This document shows, in pieces, positions 7,755 through 29,053 of a stretch of DNA of 64,000 nucleotides. The stretch lies in IMG/VR virus record IMGVR_UViG_3300042391_000634, positions 62,001-126,000 of that record; one strand, 5' to 3'. The translations under genes were made by a program, and so were the position numbers. Every line of letters begins with the position of its first letter. Positions within the stretch are counted from its first letter, which is position 1. Under the pieces are notes generated by a model that searched no databases, was not told where the DNA came from, and worked only from the letters and a program-made list of their open reading frames with translations.

Positions 7755-8086
7755 TAAAATTTAGTGATTTATTGGTAGAATCTGAAAAAATAGGATTTGA
7801 CGAGTTTTCGGCAAAGAGATTAAAGGGTGCAACCAAGATTACTGAAGATTCTAAGAAAAAAGGTGGACCGGCTATGTTAACATACCACCATTTTGTAGTA
7901 AAATTACCGTATTATAAGAAAGCATCCGAAGGTAAGTTCAAATTAGACGAGGCAAAAACAGAATTTAAAGAAAATCTTGATAAATTATGTAAATTGACGG
8001 AAGATGTTAAAATAGACCAAGTAGAATTTCAGAAATTGGTCGGTTTAATTGAGGTTTTGGGTGAATTAATCATAAAACACTCTTAA
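7751..8086 (+). CDS. Hypothetical protein
   Basis: 111-aa ORF overlapping the previous stop (ATGA). Confidence 0.7.
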   Translation: MIKFSDLLVESEKIGFDEFSAKRLKGATKITEDSKKKGGPAMLTYHHFVVKLPYYKKASEGKFKLDEAKTEFKENLDKLCKLTEDVKIDQVEFQKLVGLIEVLGELIIKHS

Positions 8087-8454
8087 AGCAAACCGTCTTT
8101 CTTCTTCATTACTCGTTTTCCCTTTTTTGTTAGAAAAAACATCTCCTCGGTCGTATCATCTTCATATGATTCAACTAAACCCCTATCTTTTAGTTCATAT
8201 AATACACTACCGGCAACGATCTCACGTAAAACAACCTCAAATTCATCGTCATTAAATACACCGAGGAATTCATCGTCTTCGTTTTCCAATTCCCCTAAAA
8301 TAAACTTATCCGTTAGCTTATCTAAAAGGTATTTTTTAGCAAATTCGGTAGATTCAATCTCATAATCCTTAAAAAACTCAGTTTCAATTAAATCACTAAT
8401 AATGTCATTAGTCATCTCTATCACGATTGGTTGGTATATCTTACTCATTATCAT
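8083..8454 (-). CDS. Acidic hypothetical protein, possible winged-helix C-terminus
   Basis: LYELKDRGLVES...FFLTKKGK resembles a wHTH wing. Confidence 0.55.
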   Translation of the reverse strand: MIMSKIYQPIVIEMTNDIISDLIETEFFKDYEIESTEFAKKYLLDKLTDKFILGELENEDDEFLGVFNDDEFEVVLREIVAGSVLYELKDRGLVESYEDDTTEEMFFLTKKGKRVMKKKDGLL

Positions 8455-8560
8455 TAAATTGGTCTATTATAAATAATAATTAAAAAACGCCTAAAAAAGA
8501 AATTTTCATGACTTTTATTTTTCATTTTTTTTTATTATATTAATACAAAATCAATTATAC

Positions 8561-9814
8561 ATGAAAAAAGGAAAAATTTTTGTACAGATAGCATCCTACA
8601 GAGACCCCGAAATGATACCTACCATTGAGGACATGATTAAAAAGGCTAAAAATCCACAAAATTTAACATTTGGTATTTGCTGGCAATATGATAGTAGTGA
8701 ACCTATTACAATGTTTGACGGTATTGAACAATTTAGAGTTAGTAAACATCACTATGGTGAAAGTGAAGGTTTAGGATGGGCAAGACATATTACTAATACA
8801 TTATATGATGATGAAGAATATACATTACAAATTGATTCACATCACAGATTCGTTCAGGATTGGGATGTGATTGTTTTAGAAGATTTTAAACAAGCAAAAA
8901 AATTATCTAAAAAACCTATAATTTCAACATATTGCACACCGTTTAACCCAAAGGAAGATGAAAGTAAATGGAGTCCTACACCTTGTTTAATGTCTCAATA
9001 TGAATTTAGTGGAGATAGATTATTGATGAGTATGCCTTGGTATATTCAAGATTATAAAACAAGAACTAACGTTATTAAAGCAAGAACAATAAGTGGTCAC
9101 TTCTATTTCACTTATGGTAAATTCATTAAAGAAGTTCCGTATGATTCAGATATCTATTTTGGTGGTTACACTGAAGAAACGACATTGAGTGTTCGTGCGT
9201 TTACAAATGGTTATGATTTCTATAGTCCATATCGTATGGTTATGTGGCACGAATATACAAGAAACTACCGTGCCAAACATTGGGACGATCATGGTGTTAA
9301 TAGTGAAACAAAGAAAACAAGTGGCCAACGAGATGTTTACGCTCGTAATAAAACCCGTCAATTATTTGGTACAGAAAACTATGATATTGATATGGGGATA
9401 TATGGTTTAGGAACTGATAGGTCTTTACATGACTATGAAGTTTATGGAGGATTTGATTTTAAAAAATGTGTTATTCAAGATTACACATTGAAGGTTAAAG
9501 AACCACCAAATCCTTCTGATTGGGAAAATCAATTTATAACAAATAAATATGATTTAACGGTAGAATGGGATTTAGAATTCTTTAAGAAATTTGAATTTAC
9601 TAAACCTAAATTTTTAACTTTTGCAATTCACACATCTTCTGGAATAGAATTACATAGAAAAGATTTTACAGTTGAAGAAAATCCACAATATGTTAATTTA
9701 GAAAATAATAAAACTACAGTTAATTTAGAGTGTATTGAGAAACCCGGCAAGATTGTGATGTATTTATTTGATGAAGATAAACAATGGAGCGATAGGTATG
9801 AAAAAACAATCTAA
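8561..9814 (+). CDS. GlcNAc-transferase-like glycosyltransferase (GT60/Gnt1-like GlcNAc family)
   Basis: IFVQIASYRDPE, GLGWARH and LQIDSHHRFVQDWD (DxH), followed by EE..LSVRAFTNGYD. Confidence 0.8.
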   Translation: MKKGKIFVQIASYRDPEMIPTIEDMIKKAKNPQNLTFGICWQYDSSEPITMFDGIEQFRVSKHHYGESEGLGWARHITNTLYDDEEYTLQIDSHHRFVQDWDVIVLEDFKQAKKLSKKPIISTYCTPFNPKEDESKWSPTPCLMSQYEFSGDRLLMSMPWYIQDYKTRTNVIKARTISGHFYFTYGKFIKEVPYDSDIYFGGYTEETTLSVRAFTNGYDFYSPYRMVMWHEYTRNYRAKHWDDHGVNSETKKTSGQRDVYARNKTRQLFGTENYDIDMGIYGLGTDRSLHDYEVYGGFDFKKCVIQDYTLKVKEPPNPSDWENQFITNKYDLTVEWDLEFFKKFEFTKPKFLTFAIHTSSGIELHRKDFTVEENPQYVNLENNKTTVNLECIEKPGKIVMYLFDEDKQWSDRYEKTI

Positions 9815-10992
9815 TGAGAATAGCATTTATAGTAATTGGTAATAGTAGAAGAAGTAACTATCTTAATGGTCACAACTTAAGATATGGTAATGGTGGTGGT
9901 TCAGGAACCGATACAAGTTCAGTATTGGTTGCTGAATACCTTGCAAAACAAGGACACGAAGTTGTCTTTGTTGCAGATAAGTTAGAACCAAAATTAGAGG
10001 AAGAGTATAAAGCAAAAGGTAGAGTTTACATACCAGGGGAAGAATTCTACGGGGTAAAATATACCAACGACAATTTTGATGGAATCGATAACAAAGAGTT
10101 TGATATAGTGGTTAGTATGTTATGGTTCCAAGATTATGATAAATTACCAATTACAGTTACTAAAGGTTTAATTTATTGGTCACATATGCAATGGATTTAT
10201 GGTGTTGACCACATCAAAAATTATGTAAAAAATAATAATCTTTCATTGGGGTTTGTTCATATTTCAGAATGGGAAAAAAAGATGACAGGTGGGTTAACGG
10301 AATCGATTAAAAATAACGAAGTTAATACAAATGTTCAAATTTCATTAATTCCTAATCCTATTATGGATGAAATGATAAATGAAGTCGTTAGTTTAACCCC
10401 AACAAGAAAACCACATAAGTTTATATTTCATGCAGCTTGGGCTCGTGGGGGTAATGTTGCAATTGAAGCTGTTAGAAAATTAGATTATCCTGATACTGAA
10501 TTTCATGCATTTGATTATTTAATGGCAACACATAATCACCAAGATTCATTTTTTAATTTACATAATGGTGTTGATAAGAAAACACTTTTTACTAATATTG
10601 CGGAGAGTGAGTATTTTATTTATCCATTATATACACCATATCAGGATGTACATAAAGACACTTTTTCTTGTGTTGTGGCTGAAGCTATTGCGTTGGGTGC
10701 TATTGTTGTAACATACCCGTTAGGTGCTTTACCTGAAAATTTCGGTGAGTTTTGTCAATGGTTAGATTTTCCTGAAGGTGTAGATGTTGAAAAAATGCAA
10801 AACGAAGCATTAACAAAAGATTTAGAAGGTAAGTTTACTATAACTGATAATATTGTGGAGAAGATAAAATATTTAGAAGAAAATCCACAAATAAAAGAAG
10901 AGTTAAGGAAAAAAGGTAAGGAATCTATCAACTCACGATTTAATGTTAATACAGTCGGCCAAATGTGGACCGATTTAATTAATAAACTATAA
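9814..10992 (+). CDS. GT-B (GT4-like) glycosyltransferase
   Basis: GGSGTDTSSV...LAKQGHEV N-terminus and DTFSCVVAEAIALG...GALPE acceptor-side motif. Confidence 0.8.
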   Translation: MRIAFIVIGNSRRSNYLNGHNLRYGNGGGSGTDTSSVLVAEYLAKQGHEVVFVADKLEPKLEEEYKAKGRVYIPGEEFYGVKYTNDNFDGIDNKEFDIVVSMLWFQDYDKLPITVTKGLIYWSHMQWIYGVDHIKNYVKNNNLSLGFVHISEWEKKMTGGLTESIKNNEVNTNVQISLIPNPIMDEMINEVVSLTPTRKPHKFIFHAAWARGGNVAIEAVRKLDYPDTEFHAFDYLMATHNHQDSFFNLHNGVDKKTLFTNIAESEYFIYPLYTPYQDVHKDTFSCVVAEAIALGAIVVTYPLGALPENFGEFCQWLDFPEGVDVEKMQNEALTKDLEGKFTITDNIVEKIKYLEENPQIKEELRKKGKESINSRFNVNTVGQMWTDLINKL

Positions 10993-10993
10993 T

Positions 10994-11704
10994 ATGAAGG
11001 TACAGGATTTTTTTAAAGAATTGTTTTATATAAATTTAGATTCAAGAACAGATAGAAAAGAACAATTTGAAAGTGAAGTGAGTCAATATGAATTTAATAC
11101 TTTCATAAAAAGATCACCCGCTTGTATCCCAAAAATAGATGATGTTGGTGATGATTATGAATTATTAGGTTATAGAAAACATGGTGCTTGTGGAAGGTCA
11201 CATAAAAATTTAGTACAATATGCGAAAGATAAAAATCTTGAAAATATTTTCGTATTTGAAGATGACGCATCATTTTATAATGATGGTGACACAAGTGCAA
11301 TTGAAATAATTGAAAGTGCTTTGGATACGTTAAATACCATTCCCGATTGGGACTTATTTTATATGGGTGGTATTATTTTTGATGAGAATATAAACAAACC
11401 GTTTGGTAATTTATTAAAGGTAGATAAAATTTTAACAACACACGCTTGGGGAATAAATAAAAAATGTTATGATACTATTTTAAAATATAGACCTGGCGAT
11501 GGTTACACCGAACAATTTGATAGCCCAATTGATGGTAATATTGGTCTTAACACAAATTTAAATAAATTTTTAGCATATCCATTAGCGGTATACCAAAGAC
11601 CAAATATTTTATCAGATTGTGCAATTCGTAGTGATGGTGTTATTTTAAAATCTGACGATGTTAGTCCTTGGATTAGAAATTATAATAAAAATATTAGAAA
11701 ATGA
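10994..11704 (+). CDS. GT25 glycosyltransferase
   Basis: FYINLDSRTDRK, GACGRSH, IFVFEDDA and TTHAWGI motifs. Confidence 0.85.
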   Translation: MKVQDFFKELFYINLDSRTDRKEQFESEVSQYEFNTFIKRSPACIPKIDDVGDDYELLGYRKHGACGRSHKNLVQYAKDKNLENIFVFEDDASFYNDGDTSAIEIIESALDTLNTIPDWDLFYMGGIIFDENINKPFGNLLKVDKILTTHAWGINKKCYDTILKYRPGDGYTEQFDSPIDGNIGLNTNLNKFLAYPLAVYQRPNILSDCAIRSDGVILKSDDVSPWIRNYNKNIRK

Positions 11705-12483
11705 AATTAGGTTTATTTTATCAAACTGGATTTAGATATGTTGCGGCATATAATGCATTAAAACAATTTAGAAAATTTTATCCTGACTCACCTGTGGCAA
11801 TGTATGAAGATAATAGTTTTGTAATGGAACCAATATCTAAAAAATTTAACTGTTCATACAATAGAACAAATTTAAATGGATTTAACGATCCAAACAGTGG
11901 TAGACCAGCATTTAATATTACAACGATTCTTGGTTGGTTTGATAGAGTTTATGATGCTTGTACCACCACTTTAATTGATGTTGATTGGGTAATGAATTTT
12001 GAAGATGATGTTTGGTTTAAAAGAGAAATAAATAGAGAACCATTATATGATTTGTCAGGAATAGGTGGTGTAGGTTGGAATGAAAAATTATATTTATATT
12101 TGGGAACTGAAACAAGGTCAATATATGGATGTGGAGGATCTGTTTTTAATAGACTTAAATTTATTGAGGCTTATAAAAAAATAAAAGATATTAAATGGGA
12201 TGAGGTTGAATTAATAGAAAGGAGACCTCTTGAATGGACGGATAGTGCAATTACATTTTTATTTTTATTTTCTAAATTAAGTGTTGGTCAATGGGAAGAC
12301 GCTCAACAATACAGACACTCAAACATCCCACATATGGGGGATAGATTAGGTTGGCCGGGGACTATGGAGGATTTAGAAAATGAACAGGGGGACATTTCGG
12401 TTATACATTGTTGGAAACCATATTATTACCCAACAAAAGAAGAAATAGATTTAGTTGATTTAGATTTAGAAAAATATAAGTAA
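11701..12483 (+). CDS. Putative GT-A glycosyltransferase
   Basis: VMNFEDDVW DxD-like motif, and position inside the GT cluster. Confidence 0.55.
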   Translation: MKLGLFYQTGFRYVAAYNALKQFRKFYPDSPVAMYEDNSFVMEPISKKFNCSYNRTNLNGFNDPNSGRPAFNITTILGWFDRVYDACTTTLIDVDWVMNFEDDVWFKREINREPLYDLSGIGGVGWNEKLYLYLGTETRSIYGCGGSVFNRLKFIEAYKKIKDIKWDEVELIERRPLEWTDSAITFLFLFSKLSVGQWEDAQQYRHSNIPHMGDRLGWPGTMEDLENEQGDISVIHCWKPYYYPTKEEIDLVDLDLEKYK

Positions 12484-13307
12484 TGCAAAGTAATAATTAC
12501 ATAACAAGTAGATTACAGGGTAGGACTGGAAATATGATGTTTCAAATAGCACATGGGTTTGCTAAGTCATTAGAATATAATAGACAATTTATTGCTCCGT
12601 CACATGAATCTTCTAGTGGACATTTAGAAAAAACATTATTTAGAAAAATAGATTTTAATATAACGCATACACCTTCAGGTGATATATCTAAACATCTATT
12701 TTTACCGTTTCATTATAATGAAATAGAAGAACCATCATTTGATAAACCAACAGTATATGTTGGTTGGTTCCAAAGTGAAAAGTATTTTAAAAAATATACA
12801 GAAGTTATAAAAGATTTATTTTCACCCACATTAGAGTTTATTAATAGAGCTAAAGTAAATTTTCCGTTTTTAGGTAATAGTGTTGTTGGGGCAATAAATG
12901 TAAGGAGGGGAGATTATTTAACACAACCAACTAGACATCCTGTTGTTTCGATTGATTACATAAATGAGGCTTATAAACATTTACCTAAATGTGATTATAT
13001 TTTAGTTTTAAGTGATGATATACCATGGTGTAGAGAAAATATTAAAATAGAAAATGTAATATTTGTTGATAATTATTTAGATTGTGACGGACTATGGTTA
13101 TTATCACTTTGTAATCATTTTATAATAAGTAATTCATCGTTCTCATGGTGGGGAGCTTATTTATCAAATAGTGAAAATAAAAAAGTAATTTCACCAAGTA
13201 CGTGGGTAGGTCCCGATATTGTTGATAATATGGAAGATATTTGGTGTGATAATTGGGTTAAAATACCAACAAAATATAATGAAGGTAAAATAATATTAGA
13301 TATATGA
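12483..13307 (+). CDS. GT11 alpha-1,2-fucosyltransferase-like protein
   Basis: GRTGNMMFQ, INVRRGDY and IISNSSFSWWGAYL are GT11 motifs. Confidence 0.9.
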   Translation: MQSNNYITSRLQGRTGNMMFQIAHGFAKSLEYNRQFIAPSHESSSGHLEKTLFRKIDFNITHTPSGDISKHLFLPFHYNEIEEPSFDKPTVYVGWFQSEKYFKKYTEVIKDLFSPTLEFINRAKVNFPFLGNSVVGAINVRRGDYLTQPTRHPVVSIDYINEAYKHLPKCDYILVLSDDIPWCRENIKIENVIFVDNYLDCDGLWLLSLCNHFIISNSSFSWWGAYLSNSENKKVISPSTWVGPDIVDNMEDIWCDNWVKIPTKYNEGKIILDI

Positions 13308-13858
13308 TAAATGAAAGAGGTTATTGGTTAGAAAAGAACAGTCATGAACACAAATATGATTTACCTCTGAACCAAGAATTAATAAAAATTTTAAAAGAAA
13401 TAAATTGTAAGTCAATCGTTGATTTGGGGTGTGGCCCTGGTTTATACACTAAATCTTTTATTGTAAGTAATTTTGATTGTGAATGTTATGATGGTAATCC
13501 ACATACTCCGAATGAAACGGATAATTTATGTTCAATATTAGATTTATCTGAACCGTTTGATTTAAATAAAAAATTTGATTGTGTATTATCTTTAGAAGTT
13601 GGAGAACATATCCCAAAAGAATATCAAGATATTTTTATTGAAAATTTATTAAGACATTCAAATGGATTAATTATTTTATCGTGGGCCACTATCGGTCAGG
13701 GGGGACATGGTCATGTAAATGAACAACCAAATGATTATATTGAAGGTTTATTAACACCTCACAATTATAAAAGAAATACAGAATATGAAAGTAGATTGAG
13801 GAATAGTGCTCAGTGGTGGTGGTTTAAAAATACCGTTATGGTGTTCCAAAAATATTAA
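13304..13858 (+). CDS. Class I SAM-dependent methyltransferase
   Basis: IVDLGCGPG motif I and FDCVLSLEVGEHI. Confidence 0.88.
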   Translation: MINERGYWLEKNSHEHKYDLPLNQELIKILKEINCKSIVDLGCGPGLYTKSFIVSNFDCECYDGNPHTPNETDNLCSILDLSEPFDLNKKFDCVLSLEVGEHIPKEYQDIFIENLLRHSNGLIILSWATIGQGGHGHVNEQPNDYIEGLLTPHNYKRNTEYESRLRNSAQWWWFKNTVMVFQKY

Positions 13859-13860
13859 AT

Positions 13861-14946
13861 ATGTACGATTACTTAATAGTTGGTGCAGGATTCTACGGAT
13901 CCATTTGTGCACATGAATTAACAAAAAAAGGTTATAAGGTTTGTGTTATTGATAATAGAAACCATATCGGAGGCAATTGCCACACTGAGAACAAAGACGG
14001 TATTAATATACATACTTATGGACCTCACGTATTTCACACATCTAATGAAGAAGTATGGAAATGGATAAATCAATTTGTTGAATTTAATAACTTTACATTA
14101 AGAATTGTTGCAAATTATAAAGGTGAGATTTATGCGTTACCATTTAATATGTGGACATTTAACAAGTTATGGAACGTCGTTACACCTAAAGAAGTGGAAG
14201 ATATAATTAAATCTCAATCAATAGGTATTGATGAACCATCTAATTTAGAAGAACAAGCAATTAAATTGGTTGGTTCGGATATCTATGAAAAATTAATTAA
14301 ACATTACACAGCTAAGCAGTGGAGAAAAGACCCAAAAGAATTACCAAAAGAGATTATCACAAGATTACCAGTTCGTTTAACATACGATAACAATTATTTT
14401 AATGACAAATATCAAGGTATTCCAATTGGTGGATACACACAAATATTTGAAAAATTATTAGATGGTATTGAAGTTAAATTAGGGGTTGATTATTTTAAAG
14501 ATGAATTACCAGAACATAATAAAGTAATTTATACTGGACCAATTGATAAATATTTTAATTACAAGTATGGTGAGTTAGAATATAAAACTACAAGATTTGA
14601 ACATTATATTTTTGGTACGGATAATTATCAAGGTTGTGCCGTTATGAATTATACGGATAGTGAAACAACGCATACGAGAACTATAGAACATAAACATTTT
14701 GAACCTGACGTTAAAACCGAATTAACGTGGGTAACATGGGAATACCCAACACAATATAAAGCAGGAGAAACAGAACCGTATTATCCTGTAAATGACAAAG
14801 AGAATACTGAAATGTATTTGAAATACAAAGAAGAGTCTAATAAGTTAGAGAACATACATTTTGGTGGGAGATTGGCCGAATACAAATATTATGATATGCA
14901 CCAAGTGATATCATCAGCATTAAATTATATAAAGAGTTTTACCTAA
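13861..14946 (+). CDS. glf: UDP-galactopyranose mutase
   Basis: YLIVGAGFYG, HIGGNC, HTYGPHVFH, EPYYP and GRLAEYKYYDMHQ. Confidence 0.97.
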   Translation: MYDYLIVGAGFYGSICAHELTKKGYKVCVIDNRNHIGGNCHTENKDGINIHTYGPHVFHTSNEEVWKWINQFVEFNNFTLRIVANYKGEIYALPFNMWTFNKLWNVVTPKEVEDIIKSQSIGIDEPSNLEEQAIKLVGSDIYEKLIKHYTAKQWRKDPKELPKEIITRLPVRLTYDNNYFNDKYQGIPIGGYTQIFEKLLDGIEVKLGVDYFKDELPEHNKVIYTGPIDKYFNYKYGELEYKTTRFEHYIFGTDNYQGCAVMNYTDSETTHTRTIEHKHFEPDVKTELTWVTWEYPTQYKAGETEPYYPVNDKENTEMYLKYKEESNKLENIHFGGRLAEYKYYDMHQVISSALNYIKSFT

Positions 14947-14995
14947 TATTTATTACTACACCATAAACATATAAACAAAATATAGATGGCCGACG

Positions 14996-15241
14996 GTGAT
15001 AGTAAAAACAGTAAACAAATTAAAAACAAAAGATTCAAGATTGAATTTATACAAAGATACATCTCTAATGTTAGCGATGTTCTTTCTCCCGTTTGGATAC
15101 GACGCTTTATTCAAGTTAATAATGGACATGAGTGGTTCATATTGGGTAGCCGATATCGTTTTCTATTCCATTTCAGGATGTTTTTGGTTATCCTATATAT
15201 TACTTACACGGCACTTAAATAAACAAAAAACCTCCAATTAG
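14996..15241 (+). CDS. Small two-TM membrane protein
   Basis: Two hydrophobic segments (SLMLAMFFLPFGY; VADIVFYSISGCFWLSYILL). GTG start is uncertain. Confidence 0.6.
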   Translation: MIVKTVNKLKTKDSRLNLYKDTSLMLAMFFLPFGYDALFKLIMDMSGSYWVADIVFYSISGCFWLSYILLTRHLNKQKTSN

Positions 15242-15257
15242 GAGGTTTTCTTTTTTT
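15225..15257. terminator. Bidirectional terminator whose loop region carries both convergent stop codons
   Basis: AAAAAACCTCC-aatta-GGAGGTTTT. TAG (+) at 15239-41 and TAA (-) at 15238-40. Confidence 0.75.
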
Positions 15258-16818: not shown

Positions 16819-18828
16819 ATGAAGTTGGGTTTAACCGAGAAACAATATAATCATTTACTTACCTTAATATCAGAAACAGAATTGGGGGAACAATCAGAAC
16901 CTGAGGCTGGCACATCAAGTACACAGGCTGGAGGTAAAGGTTATCCTGAAGTGGGTAAATGGGAAAGTGGTGTTACAAGAGGACCTGGTAATCAAGTAGG
17001 TGTTACTAAATGGGCCGATGTTGTTGGTTCTAAATTAACAAGGGGTAAAGCTAATCCGTTGAAGGAACAATCTACACCAAATTTAATTCCAATTGGTGAT
17101 AATTACAATAAATTATTTAAAGGTAAAGAAAAACCAACACCTCCAATTCCTGCAATTGAAAAATACCCAAATAATCAACAAATGGATAAAAATGGTAAAA
17201 TTACTTATCCATATGAGAAAAAAAATATGGAGGGTAACTATCTTTATTGGTATTATAAAAGTCCTATAAAATCAATTGCAGATATTAATTTTCAAGATAA
17301 ACTTAATATAAAATACAGACAAGATTTAAATAGTTGGATGATATCTAATATGAATATGACATTAGAAGATTGGGAAAGATATCACGGTAGAAAAAGTAAA
17401 AGTGGTAAAAATGTACCTAAAGGATTTAATCCAGATTTATATGATGAATATCTTTCTAAAGAACAAGACCTAAGAAAAAAAACTTTAGATATGTTAAAAA
17501 AAACCATATCTGGCGACCCAAAAGACAAACAAAAATATGATAATTTAATTAAACAATTAGATAATTTAAAAAAAGAATATAGTAATCCTCAATTTAGTTA
17601 TGGTATAACTAAAGACGAACTAAATCAATATAACCAAAAGAAAAAGTTAATTGACGATTATTATGGTAATATGTTAAAAACTGTTGATGGTGGAAATAAT
17701 TCACAATCTATATTAGAACCAATAAAAAAAGATAACTTATACATTCCTAAAAATATTAACATACCAAATCAAACCGACACACCAAATCAATATAATTTAA
17801 TTAAAAAAGAATGGTCTGAACAACTAAAAACTTTAGATCTTTTATTTGGTAAAGATAATTGGACAAAAGATGTTAGTATTTTGGGTCAAGAATTTGATAG
17901 GATTTGGGATAAGTGGGGGTCAGTAATACAAATCATTGGTAACATTGCAATAATAGCAGTTTCAGGTGGTATTGCGGGGGTGGTTGAAGGTGCGGCCGGT
18001 GCGATTGGATTTACGGTGTCGTCAGGGGCACTTAGAGCAGCATCCCCTTATGTTGCTGATTCTGTATTTAATACGTTAATTGGTACATATGAATCATCAA
18101 GAGGTAAAAATGAAGAAGCATTAATTTCTTTCTTATGTGCAATGGTACCATATGTAACCTATAGTAAAAATATTGGTAAAGTATCCGTTGAAACGGCGGA
18201 AGGGTTATCTAAAAAGATTATATTAAGTAAATTTGATACAAAAGAAAGTATGGATCGATTTATTAAGTCATTAAATCCAGAGGAAAGACATATTTTTAGA
18301 GAAACAATGTCGTTACCTAAAGAAATGATAAAAAGAAATTTTGATTTATCGGTTAAACAAATAGGTAAAACCATAAAAGGTGCGGGATTAAAGGTGACTA
18401 AAGCTGGAATTTCAACTTGGGGTCCGTTATTATTAAAACAACTTAGTGTAGAAGGTGGAATACCAATTTCTGCTGCTATTACAAATGCTCTTTTTAAATT
18501 TATACAAAATAATGAAATGATAAATTTGAGTTCAGATGATTTAATTAAAACTAGACAATATCTTGATGGCAAATTAAAAAATTCGTCACCACCCACCACC
18601 ATGATGGTATCGGATAAAATTGTTGAGGGTGTGGGAAACGGGTTAATTAAAACTTTCTCTGATGTAAAAAACGTAGTAAATGAAATGATATATAATGAAC
18701 CAACAGATGAAGATATTGATTATCTTAATAAGAAATATGGAAAATATGGTTTAAATTTATCAAAATATAAAAAAACTAAAAAAGTAAACCCTATTAGTTC
18801 TTTTAGTGGGTTAAAATTAAACAACTAA
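16819..18828 (+). CDS. Large probable head-internal/ejected protein
   Basis: N-terminal LTEKQY...LISE motif, internal duplication (TRGPGNQ/TRGKANP), and a Gly/Ala-rich hydrophobic hairpin. Late motif 4 nt upstream. Confidence 0.6.
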   Translation: MKLGLTEKQYNHLLTLISETELGEQSEPEAGTSSTQAGGKGYPEVGKWESGVTRGPGNQVGVTKWADVVGSKLTRGKANPLKEQSTPNLIPIGDNYNKLFKGKEKPTPPIPAIEKYPNNQQMDKNGKITYPYEKKNMEGNYLYWYYKSPIKSIADINFQDKLNIKYRQDLNSWMISNMNMTLEDWERYHGRKSKSGKNVPKGFNPDLYDEYLSKEQDLRKKTLDMLKKTISGDPKDKQKYDNLIKQLDNLKKEYSNPQFSYGITKDELNQYNQKKKLIDDYYGNMLKTVDGGNNSQSILEPIKKDNLYIPKNINIPNQTDTPNQYNLIKKEWSEQLKTLDLLFGKDNWTKDVSILGQEFDRIWDKWGSVIQIIGNIAIIAVSGGIAGVVEGAAGAIGFTVSSGALRAASPYVADSVFNTLIGTYESSRGKNEEALISFLCAMVPYVTYSKNIGKVSVETAEGLSKKIILSKFDTKESMDRFIKSLNPEERHIFRETMSLPKEMIKRNFDLSVKQIGKTIKGAGLKVTKAGISTWGPLLLKQLSVEGGIPISAAITNALFKFIQNNEMINLSSDDLIKTRQYLDGKLKNSSPPTTMMVSDKIVEGVGNGLIKTFSDVKNVVNEMIYNEPTDEDIDYLNKKYGKYGLNLSKYKKTKKVNPISSFSGLKLNN

Positions 18829-18860
18829 AATAACTATTTATATAAAATATACAATTGTAA

Positions 18861-20570
18861 ATGATGAAAAAAATATTAATTAATGAGATAAATAGACAGT
18901 TAAAGTTGATGGGTGTTAATAAAATCTTGTCTGAAGGTGTTATAACCAATTGGGCTAGAGATTTTTTTCAAGCGTCTAAAGTTGGTGTTGGGGTTAGTAA
19001 AAGAAACGATCTTATAAAATTATTTGACGAATCTATTAAAGAGGTTCCGATTGGAGGTTTTAAAACTTTTGAGGATTTAGAAAAGAATTTAGATATTTTT
19101 TTTAGAACTGGCAGATCGAACATTGCGGAAAGTGATTATACTAAATTAGCATTAAAAATGCTTGAGAAACTTTCTAAAGAGACTACAAATTATAAACAAA
19201 TATCTGAGATAATGTTTAATGCTTATAGAGGTGTTAATGGAATTGTTGCCGGAACGCCAAGTGGTGATTTAGTTGAAAAGATGATTAGTTTAGCGAAAAC
19301 AGCCGGTAAATCTCCAAATGATTTAAAAGTGTTTAATCAACTATCACAAGACTTAATAAATAGAAAAATTGTTGATCCGTCAATCCCTAATTTAATAAAA
19401 AATATATTTTATAACGCAATAATTCCAAATGACGTTATAAAAACAATGGATGGGTTTGTTACATATTTAAAAGGTTTACCTGGTATAAAACAAATATATG
19501 AAATAAACGCAAAAAAAGAAATGGACCGACTTGGTATGCAATCAACGTTTGACCAAATTGAATCAATTTTAAGACAATTTGATGACTCTCTTATTGGTAA
19601 TAGTGATATTACGTTTGATGAGGTATCAGCAAGAAATACATTATCAAAACTATCTGAAAAAGTTTCTTATGGTAAAAAGGATATATTAAGAATGCTTTGG
19701 TTAGATGTTAAAAAAAGATTACCTCAAACCACAATAACACAACTTGAAGATGCAAATGGTGTATTAAATTATAATAATCTTAATGAATGGTTTACATATT
19801 TTGAAAAGGCAGCAGGGGTTGAGGGAATAAAAAAACCTAACGAATATATTGGTAGACTAACGGCATTAATTAGAATATTTAACGATCCGGTACATTACAA
19901 AGATGTAAAAACATTTGGTAAAATAAAATTAGCGTCAGAAAGACTTATTAATGAATATTTTAAGGGGTCTGCTAGATTAAAAGATGAAATTGCACAAATT
20001 GAGAAGGTAATGGGTAAGAAGGGAAAATTAGGTTATAATATTGGTGAGAGATTAGTTGCATATGTTTTTTATTATCCACTTGTTGGAGCTTTTCTACAAA
20101 CAATAGGTGATTACCTTGAAAACACCGGATCGGTAACAAATGATGGTAAAGGATATAATATACCATTGCTTGGTGTGGTAGGAAAAGATTGGAGCGCTTT
20201 ACATGGAGAGACATGGAATACACCAGGAAAAAGAACAGGGTCTAATCTTGAAGGATTATGGAACTCATTTGCAACAAACTCAAAACAATTTATAAATCCA
20301 TTAAGTGCGAGTTTTCAACAAATAAGTGTTATATCACCAGCACTTGCTGACTTTATTAATAGATTTGCAACAAACAAAGCTGGAGATAATATAGATCTTA
20401 ACGAATTGAATAAAACTAAAAAAGCTATTATTGTAGAACAAACAGATACTTTACAAACAATACAAATTGAAGGTGGAAATGATTCAGAGATTAAAAAATT
20501 TATAGATACTGTAGGTATGGAACCATTGAATAAAACAAATGAAATTTTTAAAATAGATACGACACAATAA
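18861..20570 (+). CDS. Large probable head-internal/ejected protein
   Basis: MKKILINE...KILSE N-terminus, one hydrophobic segment (LVAYVFYYPLVGAFL), late motif upstream. Confidence 0.6.
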   Translation: MMKKILINEINRQLKLMGVNKILSEGVITNWARDFFQASKVGVGVSKRNDLIKLFDESIKEVPIGGFKTFEDLEKNLDIFFRTGRSNIAESDYTKLALKMLEKLSKETTNYKQISEIMFNAYRGVNGIVAGTPSGDLVEKMISLAKTAGKSPNDLKVFNQLSQDLINRKIVDPSIPNLIKNIFYNAIIPNDVIKTMDGFVTYLKGLPGIKQIYEINAKKEMDRLGMQSTFDQIESILRQFDDSLIGNSDITFDEVSARNTLSKLSEKVSYGKKDILRMLWLDVKKRLPQTTITQLEDANGVLNYNNLNEWFTYFEKAAGVEGIKKPNEYIGRLTALIRIFNDPVHYKDVKTFGKIKLASERLINEYFKGSARLKDEIAQIEKVMGKKGKLGYNIGERLVAYVFYYPLVGAFLQTIGDYLENTGSVTNDGKGYNIPLLGVVGKDWSALHGETWNTPGKRTGSNLEGLWNSFATNSKQFINPLSASFQQISVISPALADFINRFATNKAGDNIDLNELNKTKKAIIVEQTDTLQTIQIEGGNDSEIKKFIDTVGMEPLNKTNEIFKIDTTQ

Positions 20571-20579
20571 ATTTAACTA

Positions 20580-21680
20580 ATGGCAAAGAATACAGGAGAA
20601 GAAAGAAGAATATTTTTATTTAAAAATTTTGGTAAATTACTCAAAGTTAATTACAAAAATAAACCAACTAGTTTTGTGGATTTAAATTTAGGAGAAGAAG
20701 CTCCGAAAGGTGCTGGTTGGAATAAATTTATTGAAATGTATTTTAGTGATGAAAATGGAGTATTAACTTTTTTTAAAGATGCAAAAAAACTTTACGGTAC
20801 ATACAACAGTAAAAACCAAACAACTTTACAAAGTATAGTACCAAAAGTTAATTTACAACAGAACGACCCAACCAATATGTTTATTTTTTATGCTTGCGAT
20901 TTAGATTGGGCTAAAGATATTGGATATTGTAATGGAGGAAATAGTTCAACTTTACAGGATTATACCGGTTTTTATAAAATTGAGGGTAATGAACATGTTA
21001 GTGGTGCTGTTATTAATTACGATGAAACTAAACCTGATATTTTAGATGTGACGTTTCCAGATTTGGCGGATGCAAACTTTGGAAATTCCGCAATATTTCA
21101 AAAATATTCTAAAATTGAATTAAGAAAGGTTAATGATTTAAAATTTGACATATATTCACAAGATAAACAAATCAAATTTTCAGAGGTTATATTTAATGCA
21201 AATAAAAAAGAATTTACCTTTAAAATTGCACAAGTCTTTACGGGTAAAGGAGTAAAAGTGGAAGAATCGACACCCACTTCAGATACAGATACAACAGTAG
21301 ATAAGAAAAAAGATACAACATTACCTGTAGAAAAGAAAAAAGATGAAATACCGGTGGTTAGAACCAACACATTACGTTTCAACAATGAAAAGAAAACGTA
21401 TGTGGCAACAAAAAAATGTGACGATTTTCCTTTCACTTTAGGTTGTTCTAATAAATTAATCGGTGATTTAAATGCTGCACTTTTTAATGGAGATAGAATG
21501 AATGATGTTTATAATGATGAATTACAGAATGATTTAGATAATAGTGGTAATTTTGGTATAAATTCTAATATGGAAATTACAAAGAAAATATACGGTGATG
21601 TAATGGATAGATTACGAAAAAGAGGTGTAATAAAAGAAATGGTAAAAAAAGTTTTAAAAGAGTATATTATTAAGAAATAA
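20580..21680 (+). CDS. Hypothetical, probable virion protein
   Basis: Co-transcribed with the two previous genes. C-terminal VIKEMVKKVLKEY motif. Confidence 0.6.
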   Translation: MAKNTGEERRIFLFKNFGKLLKVNYKNKPTSFVDLNLGEEAPKGAGWNKFIEMYFSDENGVLTFFKDAKKLYGTYNSKNQTTLQSIVPKVNLQQNDPTNMFIFYACDLDWAKDIGYCNGGNSSTLQDYTGFYKIEGNEHVSGAVINYDETKPDILDVTFPDLADANFGNSAIFQKYSKIELRKVNDLKFDIYSQDKQIKFSEVIFNANKKEFTFKIAQVFTGKGVKVEESTPTSDTDTTVDKKKDTTLPVEKKKDEIPVVRTNTLRFNNEKKTYVATKKCDDFPFTLGCSNKLIGDLNAALFNGDRMNDVYNDELQNDLDNSGNFGINSNMEITKKIYGDVMDRLRKRGVIKEMVKKVLKEYIIKK

Positions 21681-21690
21681 AGAGTATTTA

Positions 21691-21790
21691 TTTATCAGAG
21701 TTTGGCGGTTTGGTCGCCGTTAAATGATAAACTCTAAAACGAAAAGGAGGTATTCTAAATCTCGACAAAGGGTCTTCGGACCTTTTGTTG
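21691..21790 (+). ncRNA. Candidate small structured RNA ending in a UUCG-capped terminator hairpin
   Basis: AGAGTTT/AAACTCT and GGCG/CGCC stems, then CAAAGGGTC-TTCG-GACCTTTTG. It could be only a structured 3' UTR. Confidence 0.4.
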
Positions 21791-21829
21791 TTTAATGGAC
21801 TTTTTAAAATTATTTATATATATTTTAAT

Positions 21830-23581: not shown

Positions 23582-24239
23582 ATGGGTTTTTATTTATTCT
23601 ACCTAATTTCCATCCTGTTGGTATTATCCCCATCATTTTTATTTTTTTATTTTTAATACCATTATTAATCCATTGAGAACCATATTGTGAATTTGATTCG
23701 CCAATACCTTGTCCTTTTTTTGATGATTTTATTTTCTCAATTGTTTCAGGTTTATGTTTTTTACCTTCCCAAGAATAATATTCTTGTATTGGTTTCATTT
23801 CACCCATTTGATATCTTTTTTTATTTGATTCAGATATTTGTGTAGAACGTTTTTTTCGATATTCTTCATCTGTTTTTAATCTTTCACTATGTTTTAACCC
23901 AGCAGCTTGGGAACATTTAAATTGATGTTTTTGATTGTTAAACCCACCTGAACCACCAGGTTTCATATTATAACAATTAACATCGTAAACATATTCTTCG
24001 GTGACAATTTCCTTTTCTCTTTGAATTAAAATTTCTCTATTTTTACACCATTCAATTATTTCAATTTTAAAATTTTCTTCACCATATTTTCTAATCGCAT
24101 ATCTTAAACTTTTACCACTACCTAAATAACCATCTTTTAAATTACTTGTTGAATGCATACCAATATAAAACTTATTGTTAAGTAAATTGGTTGTTTTATA
24201 AATGAAGTGGTATTTTTTTAACTTAATTGAGTTCGACAT
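23574..24239 (-). mobile_element. Free-standing GIY-YIG homing endonuclease (Seg-like) with NUMOD3-like repeats
   Basis: FIYKTTNLLNNKFYIG...YLGSG...E...YN and WEGKKHKPETIEKI. Lies immediately downstream of the tmRNA. Confidence 0.9.
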
Positions 24240-24262: not shown

Positions 24263-24274
24263 AAAAAAGTCGAG

Positions 24275-28414: not shown

Positions 28415-28452
28415 GATAATAATATACGAAAAATATTCCAATAAACAAAATG

Positions 28453-28524
28453 TATTCTCGACGGGATTCGAACCCGTATTACCTCCGTGAAAGGGAGGTG
28501 ACCTAACCCTTAGTCGACAAGAAC
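28453..28524 (-). tRNA. tRNA-Glu(TTC)
   Basis: Cloverleaf; CCTCC-CT TTC AC-GGAGG anticodon arm; GGTTCGAATCC T arm; CCA not encoded. Confidence 0.93.
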
Positions 28525-28853: not shown

Positions 28854-28856
28854 ATT

Positions 28857-29045: not shown

Positions 29046-29053
29046 GAACCGTG

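What the first reader, a model, noticed from the sequence alone, without database searches (positions are those of the whole stretch)
8561..14946. Seven-gene glycosylation operon resembling a complete protein O-glycan pathway
Seen: GT60/Gnt1-like, GT4, GT25, GT-A-like, GT11, methyltransferase and Glf genes with abutting stops and starts, none with signal peptides. Established: GT60 enzymes start glycans on hydroxyproline or Ser/Thr (Dictyostelium Skp1 pathway, then extended with Gal and alpha-1,2-Fuc), and Glf supplies UDP-Galf. Inference: cytoplasmic assembly of a methylated Fuc/Galf-containing glycan on virion proteins. Host LPS or DNA modification are alternatives.
Basis: partly seen in the sequence, partly recalled or inferred. 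Interest (0 to 1): 0.65.

Follow-up and report, generated by a model that had tools for sequence, protein, structure and literature searches.

The report
Phage mucin-type protein glycosylation operon
A giant lake-water phage carries a seven-gene sugar-adding operon whose first enzyme looks like those that start mucin-type sugar chains on proteins; it most likely coats the phage's own threonine/proline-rich fibre proteins with a strain-specific glycan, though this has not been shown experimentally.

Summary
Seven abutting + strand genes (8561-14946) encode GT60/PF11397, a GT-B/GT4-like enzyme, GT25, an orphan protein, GT11, a SAM methyltransferase and Glf. All are soluble.

The window lies in a complete 335.6 kb lytic jumbo phage from lake water. 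In 40 related viral loci, GT60 and GT4 are always adjacent. Glf is present in 33 of 41 loci. The middle genes are a swappable cassette, so only three genes form the core.

The g1 model matches polypeptide GalNAc-transferases (Z 21.5) and keeps a DxH motif.

The rivals score poorly:
- DNA modification: the genome has no TS-like hydroxymethylase, no TET/JBP enzyme and no C5 DNA methylase.
- Host envelope modification: it has no protein with more than 4 TM helices and no integrase.

The genome encodes at least 7 mucin-like (Thr/Ser-Pro)n proteins and 5 proline-free G-[ST]-S collagen-like fibres. In other lineages, and next to bacterial homologues, such PT-linker genes sit directly beside the GT60 gene (odds ratios 6.8 and 4.0).

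Best reading (about 0.5): cytoplasmic Ser/Thr O-glycosylation of phage fibre or decoration proteins. The Skp1/hydroxyproline analogy is not supported as a conserved feature. No glycan, acceptor or donor has been shown.

The parts
8455..8560 (+). AT-rich intergenic region upstream of g1, shared with the divergent gene 8083-8454(-). It is the presumed promoter region of the operon.
   Evidence: Sequence. No exact copy of either recurrent upstream motif of this genome (TATTTATA or TAnnTTTG) lies before g1, so expression timing is unknown.
8561..9814 (+). g1, 417 aa. A GT60 (PF11397) GT-A glycosyltransferase and the proposed initiating polypeptide alpha-HexNAc transferase. It carries an extra C-terminal beta-rich domain (about residues 328-417).
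   Evidence: PF11397, E 1e-59. AF2 model pLDDT 81.6. Foldseek top ~40 hits and VIA-align top 29 entries are all ppGalNAc-Ts, Z 21.5, rmsd 3.6 A, 271 residues. D92-S93-H94 is invariant in 26 homologues.
9814..10992 (+). g2, 392 aa. A GT-B fold, GT4-like (retaining-type) glycosyltransferase. It directly follows g1 in all 40 related viral loci where a g1 ORF was called and is the proposed second-sugar transferase.
   Evidence: Sub-threshold Pfam GT4/GT1 hits. AF2 pLDDT 93.4. Foldseek hits SPS, PimA, MshA and BshA at E ~1e-11. Synteny. Fusions GT4-FkbM (L041) and GT4-GT25 (L022).
10994..11704 (+). g3, 236 aa. A GT25-family GT-A enzyme (beta-galactosyltransferase type) and part of the variable cassette.
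   Evidence: PF01755, E 2.5e-7. Family profile A4 against the PDB: procollagen galactosyltransferase 1 at E 3e-13, Mimivirus R655 at E 2e-10. E89-D90-D91 invariant.
11701..12483 (+). g4, 260 aa. An orphan phage-only family, possibly a GT-A-like transferase (unverified). It is a rare cassette member, present in only 2 of the 41 loci.
   Evidence: No Pfam, NCBIfam or PDB hit, even with a 29-sequence profile. 80 metagenomic relatives, all unnamed. Invariant E101-D102-D103. Atlas neighbours are viral 'putative glycosyltransferase' clusters.
12483..13307 (+). g5, 274 aa. A GT11 alpha-1,2-fucosyltransferase family protein and cassette member. In other loci it almost always follows a GT25 gene.
   Evidence: PF01531, E 8e-28, covering profile positions 32-297 of 298. 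Gene order.
13304..13858 (+). g6, 184 aa. A class I SAM-dependent methyltransferase, the proposed sugar O-methyl cap. It is a cassette member; other strains carry FkbM-type or Methyltransf_24 enzymes instead.
   Evidence: PF13489, E 3e-7. Alternative methyltransferases in the cassettes.
13861..14946 (+). g7, 361 aa. UDP-galactopyranose mutase (Glf), which supplies UDP-Galf. It is the third core gene, present in 33 of 41 loci.
   Evidence: TIGR00031 equivalog, E 1e-119, 400 bits against a cut-off of 304; PF03275, E 4.5e-74. Synteny.
14986..15222 (+). Small 78-aa ORF with a hydrophobic C-terminal half, lying between Glf and the terminator. It is possibly the last gene of the unit; function unknown.
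   Evidence: Small ORFs in the same position occur in L009 and L037.
15227..15249 (.). Bidirectional intrinsic-terminator-like hairpin (9-11 bp stem, T runs on both sides). It closes the operon and the convergent genes beyond it.

Best explanation
The operon is a soluble, cytoplasmic, stepwise O-glycosylation pathway of a lytic freshwater jumbo phage.

Proposed steps (all inferred):
1. g1, a GT60 enzyme with the fold and DxH metal motif of the mucin-type polypeptide HexNAc-transferases, puts the first sugar on Thr/Ser. The likely donor is a UDP-HexNAc.
2. The acceptors are the phage's own low-complexity proteins, chiefly the (Thr/Ser-Pro)n 'PT-linker' mucin-like proteins. The proline-free G-[ST]-S collagen-like tail fibres may also be acceptors.
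3. g2, a retaining-type GT-B/GT4-like enzyme, adds the next sugar.
4. Because g1, g2 and Glf form the only conserved core, galactofuranose is probably part of the inner glycan.
5. A strain-specific cassette then extends and caps the chain. In this strain it is GT25 (Gal-type), the orphan g4, GT11 (alpha-1,2-Fuc on Gal) and a SAM methyltransferase (O-methyl cap).
6. Cassette swapping between otherwise nearly identical phages gives each strain its own glycan.

The likely result is a bottle-brush coat on virion fibres that stiffens and protects the linkers and changes what the particle sticks to or is recognised by.

What is shown: the gene families, the folds, the solubility, the synteny, the cassette variation, the presence of candidate acceptors and their neighbourhood association.

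What is inferred: the acceptor, the donors, the order of steps and the location on the virion.
For: 1. Enzyme identity. g1 matches PF11397 at E 1e-59. Its model aligns over residues 1-311 with ppGalNAc-T catalytic domains at Z 21.5. The top 29 entries are all ppGalNAc-Ts, and the next fold scores 16.4. D92-x-H94 is invariant. GT60 enzymes initiate mucin-type O-glycans on Ser/Thr-rich domains in protists (PMC8724618).

2. All seven proteins are soluble.

3. The genome (CheckV 100%) has no ORF with more than 4 predicted TM helices, so it has no Wzx, Wzy, oligosaccharyltransferase, WecA or GtrA/C type protein. It has no integrase.

4. No known route to DNA acceptor bases exists: no PF00303, PF12851 or PF00145.

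5. Candidate acceptors in the same genome:
- At least 7 PT-linker proteins, for example C1:193178-198865 (1895 aa, 130 [ST]P) and 238248-241568 (1106 aa, 110 [ST]P).
- 5 collagen-like fibres carrying about 690 G-[ST]-S triplets and no proline.
- Several of these genes share the TATTTATA upstream motif with the terminase and portal genes, marking them as probable late or structural genes.

6. Neighbourhood association.
- In other phage lineages a PT-linker gene lies immediately next to the cluster. Examples: the L012 978-aa protein with 129 [ST]P upstream and a 254-aa PT protein downstream; the L020-26 PT protein lying between a collagen/S74 tail fibre and GT60; the 343-aa protein of L010/L011.
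- Adjacent ORFs carry PT linkers in 21 of 75 cases, against 26 of 479 other ORFs in the same loci (OR 6.8, p 3e-8). The whole-genome background is 2-3%.
- Bacterial g1 homologues, an independent set, show the same bias: 10 of 77 against 14 of 388 (OR 4.0, p 0.002).

7. Pathway coherence. GT4-GT25 and GT4-FkbM fusions exist, and GT25 precedes GT11 in cassettes.

8. The same genome invests heavily in glycans elsewhere. It has two more GT/methyltransferase/NDP-sugar clusters, one of them beside a tail-fibre gene, plus ADP-heptose genes.

9. Precedent. Virion O-glycosylation by phage-encoded GTs is known in mycobacteriophages (Freeman 2023, as summarised in PMC12619734).
Against: - No biochemical, proteomic or expression data exist. 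No RNA run holds the locus.
- In this phage's own lineage no PT-linker or fibre gene is adjacent to the operon. The nearest hypervariable fibre-like genes start 1.9 kb downstream and are not PT-rich.
- The neighbourhood statistics are not corrected for phylogeny. Fibre genes and glycan genes could share a plastic region for unrelated reasons.
- Collagen-like proteins are absent from the complete related genome G001, so they cannot be the universal acceptor.
- In some lineages the cluster sits beside replication genes: DNA polymerase B in L006-8 and in XacN1/Xoo-sp13, primase in L012.
- A phage Glf has been tied to DNA glycosylation (PMC13326640).
- The operon lacks the putative late-promoter motif.
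- A GT-A fold similar to ppGalNAc-T does not by itself prove a polypeptide acceptor.
- The complex prediction of g1 with a PT segment could not be run.
Confidence: 0.5

Rival explanations
1. DNA hypermodification. The transferases build an oligosaccharide, possibly containing Galf, on a modified base of the phage genome to block restriction and CRISPR nucleases.
For: - Phage GT-A and GT-B enzymes do put diverse glycans on 5hmC (bioRxiv 10.1101/2023.12.21.572611).
- A phage Glf accompanies galactosylated 5-hydroxycytosine DNA in Rhizobium phage RL38J1 (PMC13326640).
- The PDB neighbours of g2 (6kih, 7fg9, 3mbo, 3c4q, 7qsg) are the same generic GT4 hits reported there for DNA arabinosyl- and glucosyl-transferases.
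- The cluster lies next to DNA polymerase or primase genes in some lineages and in XacN1/Xoo-sp13.
- Cassette diversification would also fit an arms race with nucleases.
Against: - The complete genome has no TS-like hydroxymethylase or 5hoC synthase (PF00303), no TET/JBP dioxygenase (PF12851) and no C5 DNA methylase (PF00145). Each search returned zero first-look candidates while the controls rang.
- TS-family genes in G001 and G004 are far from the cluster. Tet_JBP is absent from all four related records searched.
- The closest folds to g1 are polypeptide GalNAc-transferases, not the JGT/TarP-like GT-A of the DNA systems.
- The pathway has five transferase-like genes plus a methyltransferase. 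To my knowledge, the longest DNA glycans described so far, in the papers read here, have two to three sugars.
Confidence: 0.12
2. Host envelope remodelling. The enzymes alter a host surface glycan (LPS/O-antigen, capsule, or teichoic-acid-like or glycolipid acceptors on the cytoplasmic face) during infection. The purpose could be to block superinfection or to aid release.
For: - GT25, GT11, GT4 and Glf are classic O-antigen and LOS locus components (Pfam descriptions).
- After the ppGalNAc-Ts, g1 resembles TarS/RmlT wall-teichoic-acid transferases.
- Cassette variability resembles that of O-antigen loci.
- Host flippases could export a phage-altered lipid-linked glycan.
Against: - There is no initiating phosphoglycosyl transferase, flippase, polymerase, ligase or Gtr-type membrane protein. 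No ORF has more than 4 TM helices.
- There is no integrase, so lysogenic seroconversion is unlikely.
- All seven proteins are soluble.
- The conserved partner of the cluster across lineages is a PT-linker protein gene, not an envelope gene.
- Bacterial g1 homologues are not embedded with g2 or Glf homologues.
Confidence: 0.15
3. Hydroxyproline-linked (Skp1/HRGP-type) glycosylation. A phage prolyl 4-hydroxylase converts Pro in the (Thr-Pro)n repeats to Hyp, and g1 acts like Gnt1 on Hyp rather than on Thr/Ser.
For: - GT60 includes the Skp1 Hyp GlcNAc-transferase Gnt1.
- This genome has three PF13640 (P4H-type) 2OG-oxygenase domains and hundreds of Thr-Pro dipeptides.
- The GT25 then GT11 order could mirror the Fuc-alpha-1,2-Gal-beta-GlcNAc core of the Skp1 glycan (established knowledge, from memory).
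Against: - PF13640 is absent from the complete related genome G001 and from G002-G004, all of which carry the GT60-GT4 core.
- None of the three oxygenase genes is near the operon. One of them is embedded in an NDP-sugar enzyme fusion.
- The proline-free G-[ST]-S fibres could not use this route.
Confidence: 0.1
4. Modification of host proteins or of a soluble small molecule (a takeover or anti-defence function) rather than of virion components.
For: - The operon lacks the TATTTATA motif shared by the terminase, portal and fibre genes.
- In this lineage it is flanked by small genes of unknown function.
- GT4-type enzymes occur in 'conflict systems' (the PF20706 hit of another GT in this genome).
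Against: - No associated sensor or effector genes were found.
- The recurrent neighbours in other lineages are phage PT-linker and fibre genes.
- A five-enzyme, strain-variable glycan is hard to explain for an intracellular target.
Confidence: 0.08

Closest known systems
Protist mucin-type O-GlcNAc initiation by CAZy GT60 pp-alphaGlcNAc-transferases (Dictyostelium, T. cruzi), and the related metazoan GT27 ppGalNAc-Ts
   Same: g1 is a PF11397 member (203 bits) with a GT-A fold, a DxH motif and Z 21.5 to ppGalNAc-T catalytic domains. Candidate acceptors are Thr/Ser/Pro-rich mucin-like repeats. Like GT60, it has no ricin lectin domain.
   Different: The system is encoded by a bacteriophage and acts in a bacterial cytoplasm with no Golgi or signal anchor. 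It carries an unrelated C-terminal beta domain. It is coupled to a GT4-like enzyme and Glf, which are not part of the eukaryotic pathways. Donor and acceptor are untested.
Dictyostelium/Toxoplasma Skp1 hydroxyproline glycosylation (PhyA, Gnt1, PgtA, AgtA)
   Same: It is cytoplasmic and GT60-initiated, and the presence of GT25 and GT11 makes a Gal then alpha-1,2-Fuc extension plausible.
   Different: There is no conserved prolyl hydroxylase partner (absent in G001-G004). No Skp1-like single-site target is evident; the candidate acceptors are long repeats. The extension enzymes belong to other families (GT25/GT11, not GT2/GT74/GT77).
Mycobacteriophage virion O-glycosylation (Che8, Myrna and others; Freeman et al. 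2023)
   Same: A phage-encoded cytoplasmic GT operon, sometimes with methyltransferases, that decorates the phage's own structural proteins. One protein here (C1:143370-144929) ends in a PT-rich C-terminal tail.
   Different: The host phylum, the enzyme families (no GT60 or Glf is known to me in those phages) and the proposed acceptors (long PT-linker and collagen-like fibres rather than capsid or tail-tube C-termini) all differ. In the present case nothing has been shown experimentally.
Giant-virus autonomous glycosylation (Mimivirus fibrils, chlorovirus capsid glycans)
   Same: There are several virus-encoded GT, methyltransferase and NDP-sugar clusters. The fibres are collagen-like and heavily Ser/Thr-rich. 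The GT25 profile hits Mimivirus R655 (E 2e-10). Glycan gene sets are clade-specific.
   Different: The virus is a tailed bacteriophage with a bacterial host. The initiating enzyme family is different, and the glycan cassette is swapped at strain level.
Phage DNA glycosylation systems (T4 a/b-GT, 5hmC/5hoC glycans, RL38J1 with Glf)
   Same: Phage-encoded soluble GT-A/GT-B enzymes, sometimes with Glf, sometimes near replication genes, and diversifying.
   Different: The defining base-hydroxylating step (TS-like synthase, or TET plus a C5 methylase) is absent from this complete genome. The fold of g1 is ppGalNAc-T-like, not JGT/TarP-like.

Membership tests
CAZy GT60 / Pfam PF11397 (polypeptide alpha-GlcNAc transferases) | Sequence match to the family model above the curated threshold | tested here: met
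   203.2 bits against a cut-off of 21, E 1e-59. All 120 listed relatives carry PF11397.
CAZy GT60 / Pfam PF11397 (polypeptide alpha-GlcNAc transferases) | GT-A fold related to the GT27 ppGalNAc-T catalytic domain, with a DxH metal motif | tested here: met
   AF2 model. VIA-align Z 21.5, rmsd 3.6 A, 271 residues, with the top 29 entries all ppGalNAc-Ts. D92-S93-H94 invariant.
CAZy GT60 / Pfam PF11397 (polypeptide alpha-GlcNAc transferases) | Transfers GlcNAc from UDP-GlcNAc in alpha linkage to Thr/Ser or Hyp of a polypeptide | not testable with these tools
   This needs an enzyme assay or glycopeptide MS.
Skp1-type hydroxyproline glycosylation pathway | An obligatory prolyl 4-hydroxylase that creates the Hyp acceptor | tested here: not met
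   PF13640 domains exist in this genome but are unlinked to the operon. They are absent from G001 (100% complete) and from G002-G004, all of which carry the core.
CAZy GT4 (retaining GT-B) | Sequence match above the family threshold | tested here: not met
   The best Pfam hits score 17-20 bits against cut-offs of 25-28.5.
CAZy GT4 (retaining GT-B) | Two-Rossmann GT-B fold closest to GT4 members | tested here: met
   pLDDT 93.4, pTM 0.92. Foldseek hits SPS, PimA, MshA, BshA and PglA at E 1e-11 to 1e-8.
CAZy GT25 | Family model match and an acidic DxD-type motif | tested here: met
   PF01755, 31.2 bits against 24. Profile hits procollagen galactosyltransferase 1 at E 3e-13. E89-D90-D91 invariant.
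CAZy GT11 (alpha-1,2-fucosyltransferase) | Family model match over nearly the full length | tested here: met
   PF01531, 97.9 bits against 23.9, covering profile positions 32-297 of 298. Donor and linkage are untested.
UDP-galactopyranose mutase (Glf) | Equivalog-level match with an FAD-binding N-terminus | tested here: met
   TIGR00031, 399.9 bits against 303.75; PF03275 and PF13450.
GT-A glycosyltransferase (claim for g4) | A recognisable GT-A family match or fold | tested here: inconclusive
   No Pfam, NCBIfam or PDB match, even by profile. hhalign against the GT25 profile gives probability 3.6%, restricted to the EDD motif. Atlas leads are weak.
Phage DNA glycosylation systems | An enzyme that makes the hydroxylated base: a TS-like 5hmC/5hmU/5hoC synthase, or TET/JBP plus a C5 methylase | tested here: not met
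   PF00303, PF12851 and PF00145 give no match in the 100%-complete genome.
Wzx/Wzy, ABC-type or Gtr-type envelope glycan pathways | Polytopic membrane components: initiating transferase, flippase, polymerase, ligase or GtrA/C | tested here: not met
   A hydropathy scan of all 427 ORFs finds at most 4 TM segments in any ORF. No integrase.
Phage virion O-glycosylation (mycobacteriophage type) | Glycan detected on virion structural proteins | not testable with these tools
   The evidence is indirect only: candidate acceptors, neighbourhood association and a shared probable late-promoter motif on the acceptor genes.

The most novel reading that the evidence does not exclude
Tailed phages, and the bacteria that carry g1 homologues next to PT-linker proteins, may possess a cytoplasmic counterpart of eukaryotic mucin-type O-glycosylation. 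In this reading a GT60/GT27-like enzyme seeds glycans on (Thr/Ser-Pro)n and G-[ST]-S repeats. A Galf-containing core is then extended by a hypervariable cassette. The result is glycan-coated, mucin-like and collagen-like fibres on jumbo-phage virions, the bacteriophage equivalent of giant-virus glycosylated fibrils. The family is abundant in lakes, with about 3,800 protein clusters.
Probability: 0.4. Interest if true: 0.8.

Novelty: new variant of a known kind. Interest (0 to 1): 0.62.

Why it matters
Phage-encoded glycosylation of virion proteins has so far been demonstrated only in mycobacteriophages. Elaborate virus-encoded glycan machinery was thought typical of giant viruses of eukaryotes.

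If this reading is true, several things follow:
- A very common family of lake jumbo phages builds strain-specific glycans on mucin-like and collagen-like fibres. It does so with an enzyme related to the one that starts mucin O-glycans in eukaryotes.
- Many 'hypothetical' phage genes would gain a function.
- The hypervariable region would be explained as a glycan serotype locus of the virion.
- A prokaryotic origin or counterpart for mucin-type O-glycosylation would become plausible.
- Soluble enzymes for glyco-engineering PT-linker peptides would become available.
- The system would bear on how phage particles stick to surfaces, resist proteases and are recognised by hosts or grazers.

Tried and rejected
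Searches that gave nothing:
- PDB sequence searches with g1 alone, and with profiles of g1, g2 and g4, were empty or gave only noise.
- g4 stayed unassigned after Pfam, NCBIfam, a 29-sequence profile, hhalign against the GT25 and c9 families, and the Atlas.
- The downstream hypervariable proteins (16819-23581) had no PHROG hit. Their only Pfam hit was a borderline GDSL/SGNH match.
- tblastn of two PT-linker proteins against cultured phages found nothing.
- Their PDB hits are only low-complexity linker matches.
- No RNA run holds the locus, so expression could not be examined.
- Literature searches for phage GT60 or jumbo-phage mucin-type glycosylation found no prior description. The Freeman 2023 and Cell Reports 2024 papers were not held.

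Hypotheses weakened or dropped:
- Collagen-like fibres as the universal acceptor: the complete related genome G001 has no collagen repeat.
- Hydroxyproline as the universal acceptor: P4H-type domains are absent from G001-G004.
- T4-type late promoter TATAAATA: it is not enriched. Its reverse complement, TATTTATA, is the enriched motif, and it is absent upstream of g1.

Not run:
It gives no evidence either way.

- No other genetic code was used; table 11 gives 95% coding density.
- Read laying was given 5,940 letters.

Full report
**What is there.**
The window is bases 62001-126000 of a single-contig virus record. The record is 335,630 bp long with 31% GC. Its ends overlap, and CheckV rates it 100% complete. 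PHROGs identify a large terminase and a portal protein in the window. The terminase is distantly T4-like; its best cultured relatives, at 27-30% identity, are Microcystis and Flavobacterium myoviruses and uncultured huge phages. The standard code fits, with 95% coding density.

Their junctions range from a 4-nt overlap to a 2-nt gap. A 78-aa ORF (14986-15222) and a bidirectional hairpin terminator (15227-15249) follow them.

**Family assignments.**
- g1 is PF11397/GT60 (E 1e-59).
- g3 is GT25 (E 2.5e-7).
- g5 is GT11 (E 8e-28).
- g6 is a class I SAM methyltransferase.
- g7 is Glf at equivalog level (400 bits).
- The g3 family profile hits procollagen galactosyltransferase 1 (E 3e-13) and Mimivirus R655 (E 2e-10) in the PDB.
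- g2 reaches GT4/GT1 models only below threshold. Its AF2 model (pLDDT 93) is a GT-B fold nearest to retaining GT4 enzymes.
- g4 remains an orphan. It has 80 metagenomic relatives, no Pfam or PDB match even by profile, and an invariant E-D-D motif.
- None of the seven has a signal peptide or a TM helix.

**The first enzyme.**
The AF2 model of g1 (pLDDT 81.6) has a GT-A domain and a separate C-terminal beta-rich domain. Foldseek's first ~40 PDB hits are all polypeptide GalNAc-transferases. VIA-align gives Z 21.5 (rmsd 3.6 A, 271 residues) and its top 29 entries are all ppGalNAc-Ts. The next folds, LARGE1 and B4GALNT1, score about 16. D92-S93-H94, the DxH metal motif of this enzyme class, is invariant in 26 homologues.

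According to PMC8724618, GT60 enzymes are the protist counterparts of GT27. They start mucin-type O-glycans on Ser/Thr-rich domains, and the family also contains the Skp1 hydroxyproline enzyme.

BFVD holds similar auto-annotated 'Glycosyltransferase, GlcNAc' proteins from uncultured Caudovirales, Megaviridae and Pandoravirus. None has been studied, as far as the literature searches show.

**Conservation and the cassette.**
g1 has about 3,800 relatives (90% clusters) in metagenomes, almost all unnamed. There are 41 loci in IMG/VR.
- In all 40 loci where a g1 ORF was called, g2 directly follows it.
- Glf is present in 33 of the 41 loci.
- Four loci consist of GT60-GT4-Glf only.
- Between g2 and Glf lies a variable cassette. 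It draws on GT25, GT11, g4, an unassigned family, FkbM-type and other methyltransferases, and DUF3431. GT4-FkbM and GT4-GT25 fusions also occur.
- Phages whose flanks and g1/g7 are 85-99% identical to the window carry different cassettes. In L001-3 even g2 is replaced by a 40%-identical version.
- A lake-metagenome contig joins 10202 to 12771 with other sequence between, which points to an alternative cassette in nature.

The phage itself occurs, letter for letter, in lake-water metagenomes from several studies.

So the 'seven-gene pathway' is really a three-gene core plus a strain-specific extension and capping set.

**Excluding the named alternatives.**
DNA glycosylation is a serious rival, for three reasons. 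Phage GTs put diverse glycans on 5hmC. A phage Glf accompanies galactosylated 5-hydroxycytosine. The cluster also neighbours replication genes in some lineages.

However, this complete genome has no thymidylate-synthase-family hydroxymethylase, no TET/JBP dioxygenase and no C5 DNA methylase.

Envelope glycan pathways need polytopic membrane proteins, and no ORF of the genome has more than four predicted TM segments. There is no integrase, which argues against lysogenic seroconversion.

**Candidate acceptors.**
The genome encodes five tail-fibre-like proteins of 675-1631 aa. One has an S74 chaperone end, and PHROGs return tail-fibre hits. Together they carry about 690 collagen-type triplets that are almost purely G-[ST]-S and contain no proline.

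It also encodes at least seven proteins with long (Thr/Ser-Pro)n 'PT-linker' tracts separating small Cys-rich modules. Examples are 1895-aa and 1106-aa proteins with 130 and 110 [ST]P dipeptides. The 1106-aa protein lies among the collagen-like fibre genes.

Several fibre and PT genes share an upstream TATTTATA motif, 11-30 nt before the start codon, with the terminase, the portal and the putative capsid gene. The motif is found before 34 genes where 2 are expected, so it is a probable late promoter.

**Neighbourhood evidence.**
In other lineages a PT-linker gene sits directly against the cluster.
- L012/13 have a 978-aa protein with 129 [ST]P upstream and a 254-aa PT protein just after Glf.
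- L020-26 have a PT protein between a collagen/S74 tail fibre and GT60.
- L010/11, L015-17, L022, L032/35, L034 and L041 show similar arrangements.

ORFs adjacent to the cluster carry PT linkers in 21 of 75 cases, against 26 of 479 for other ORFs in the same loci (OR 6.8, Fisher p 3e-8). The whole-genome background is 2-3%.

An independent set gives the same bias. It comprises 53 bacterial loci with g1 homologues of 31-67% identity (mostly 31-46%), from Verrucomicrobiota, Sphingomonadales, Gemmatimonadota, Actinoplanes and others. They lack g2 and Glf partners. Here the figures are 10 of 77 against 14 of 388 (OR 4.0, p 0.002).

These counts are not corrected for relatedness. In the window's own lineage no such gene is adjacent.

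Two acceptor ideas are limited by the related genomes.
- Collagen repeats are absent from the complete related genome G001, so they cannot be the common acceptor. PT-linker proteins are present in all three genomes examined in full.
- P4H-type oxygenase domains occur three times in this genome but in none of G001-G004. A hydroxyproline (Skp1-type) start is therefore not a conserved feature.

**Wider glycan investment.**
Outside the window the genome holds two further clusters.
- C1:297598-306022 (-) lies beside a fibre gene. It has three GT2-type and two GT4-type transferases, two methyltransferases, DUF3431 and an epimerase.
- C1:261443-270804 (-) has an 870-aa fusion of epimerase, 2OG-oxygenase and an Fcl-like domain, plus an RmlC-like enzyme, a split TPP enzyme and an epimerase.

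ADP-heptose genes lie at about 52.5-55.6 kb. This profile resembles giant-virus glycosylation machinery more than a DNA-modification module.

**Verdict.**

The best reading, at about 0.5 confidence, is a cytoplasmic mucin-type Ser/Thr O-glycosylation system. It would act on the phage's own PT-linker proteins, and perhaps on the collagen-like fibre or decoration proteins. It would have a GT60-GT4-Glf core and a strain-specific Gal/Fuc/methyl extension.

Acceptor, donors, order of steps and virion location are all inferred. No glycan has been observed.

The rivals are DNA hypermodification (0.12), host envelope remodelling (0.15), a Hyp-linked variant (0.10) and non-virion targets (0.08).

I rate it a new variant of a known kind, namely phage or giant-virus self-glycosylation. 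It is of real interest because the family is abundant and uncharacterised, and because the hypothesis can be tested directly with a handful of soluble proteins.

Noticed in passing
window 26548-26949 (-): A GOLLD RNA (Rfam RF02032, 290 bits against a gathering score of 150, full model length). It lies between the tmRNA and the tRNA cluster of this phage.
   Followed up: no
window 24274-24679 (-) and 28452-29590 (-): A phage-encoded tmRNA (Rfam 91 bits; ARAGORN tag peptide ATSTVAVA) and four tRNAs (Glu, Ser, Met, Thr).
   Followed up: partly
genome C1:226505-245424 and 294170-296197 (outside the window): Five tail-fibre-like proteins with about 690 collagen-type triplets that are almost purely Gly-Ser/Thr-Ser and contain no proline. 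This is an unusual 'collagen' composition, and its triple-helix stability might depend on glycosylation.
   Followed up: partly
genome C1:189925-201934, 237887-241568 and 143370-144929 (outside the window): At least seven mucin-like proteins with long (Thr/Ser-Pro)n linkers between small Cys-rich modules. One, of 519 aa, ends in a C-terminal PT tail. Their only PHROG match is phrog_15511, of unknown function.
   Followed up: partly
genome C1:297598-306022 (-) and C1:261443-270804 (-) (outside the window): Two further glycan clusters. The first has three GT2-type and two GT4-type transferases, two O-methyltransferase-like genes, DUF3431 and an epimerase, and lies next to a fibre gene. The second has an 870-aa fusion of epimerase, 2OG-Fe(II) oxygenase and an Fcl-like reductase, plus an RmlC-like epimerase, a split TPP (E1/transketolase-like) enzyme and another epimerase. 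Together these suggest synthesis of an unusual, possibly branched, deoxy sugar.
   Followed up: partly
genome C1:52519-55590 (-) (outside the window): ADP-heptose pathway genes in a phage: an HldD-like epimerase (204 bits to TIGR02197) and a heptose-7-phosphate kinase domain.
   Followed up: no
window 16819-23581 (+): Four large proteins (669, 569, 366 and 598 aa) lie 1.9 kb downstream of the operon. They are singletons or poorly conserved even among the closest relatives, so they resemble a hypervariable receptor-binding region. The last has a borderline GDSL/SGNH esterase match. Two of them carry the TATTTATA upstream motif.
   Followed up: partly
whole genome; in the window for example upstream of 55763 (terminase), 57593 (portal) and 61686: Two recurrent upstream motifs. 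TATTTATA lies 11-30 nt before the start of 34 genes (2.1 expected), including the terminase, portal and fibre genes, and is a probable late promoter. TAnnTTTG lies before 30 genes (10.9 expected). From memory, this resembles the Bacteroidota -7 promoter element, which hints at a Bacteroidota host.
   Followed up: partly
loci L042 (Xanthomonas phage XacN1) and L043 (Xoo-sp13); also Stenotrophomonas phages CM1 and RAS14: Cultured jumbo phages carry a g1 homologue (31-36% identity). It is followed not by GT4 and Glf but by a 765-aa carbamoyltransferase, near the DNA polymerase and RNase H genes. In Xoo-sp13 a giant ORF about 8 kb away has PT linkers. These phages are the only culturable handles on the family.
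   Followed up: partly
loci L105-L157 (bacterial genomes), for example L131, L125 and L119: Chromosomal g1 homologues in Verrucomicrobiota, Sphingomonadales, Gemmatimonadota, Actinoplanes, Polynucleobacter and others. Several lie directly beside proteins with long PT/PS linkers. L105, L106 and L126 look like phage contigs binned into MAGs.
   Followed up: partly
window 42977-44557 (+): A 526-aa protein with an N-terminal signal-peptide-like segment, long Ala/Ser and Lys/Glu/Thr low-complexity tracts, and a C-terminal region that looks like an outer-membrane beta-barrel. This is odd for a phage.
   Followed up: no
window 47705-49717 (-) and 23574-24239 (-): A 670-aa AAA+ ATP-dependent protease homologue (phrog_4871, E 4e-243) and a GIY-YIG/SegE-type homing endonuclease.
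   Followed up: no
window 10202-12771, run X7: One lake-metagenome contig at higher depth joins 10202 to 12771, from within g2 to within g5, with other sequence between. A co-occurring strain therefore carries a different cassette.
   Followed up: no
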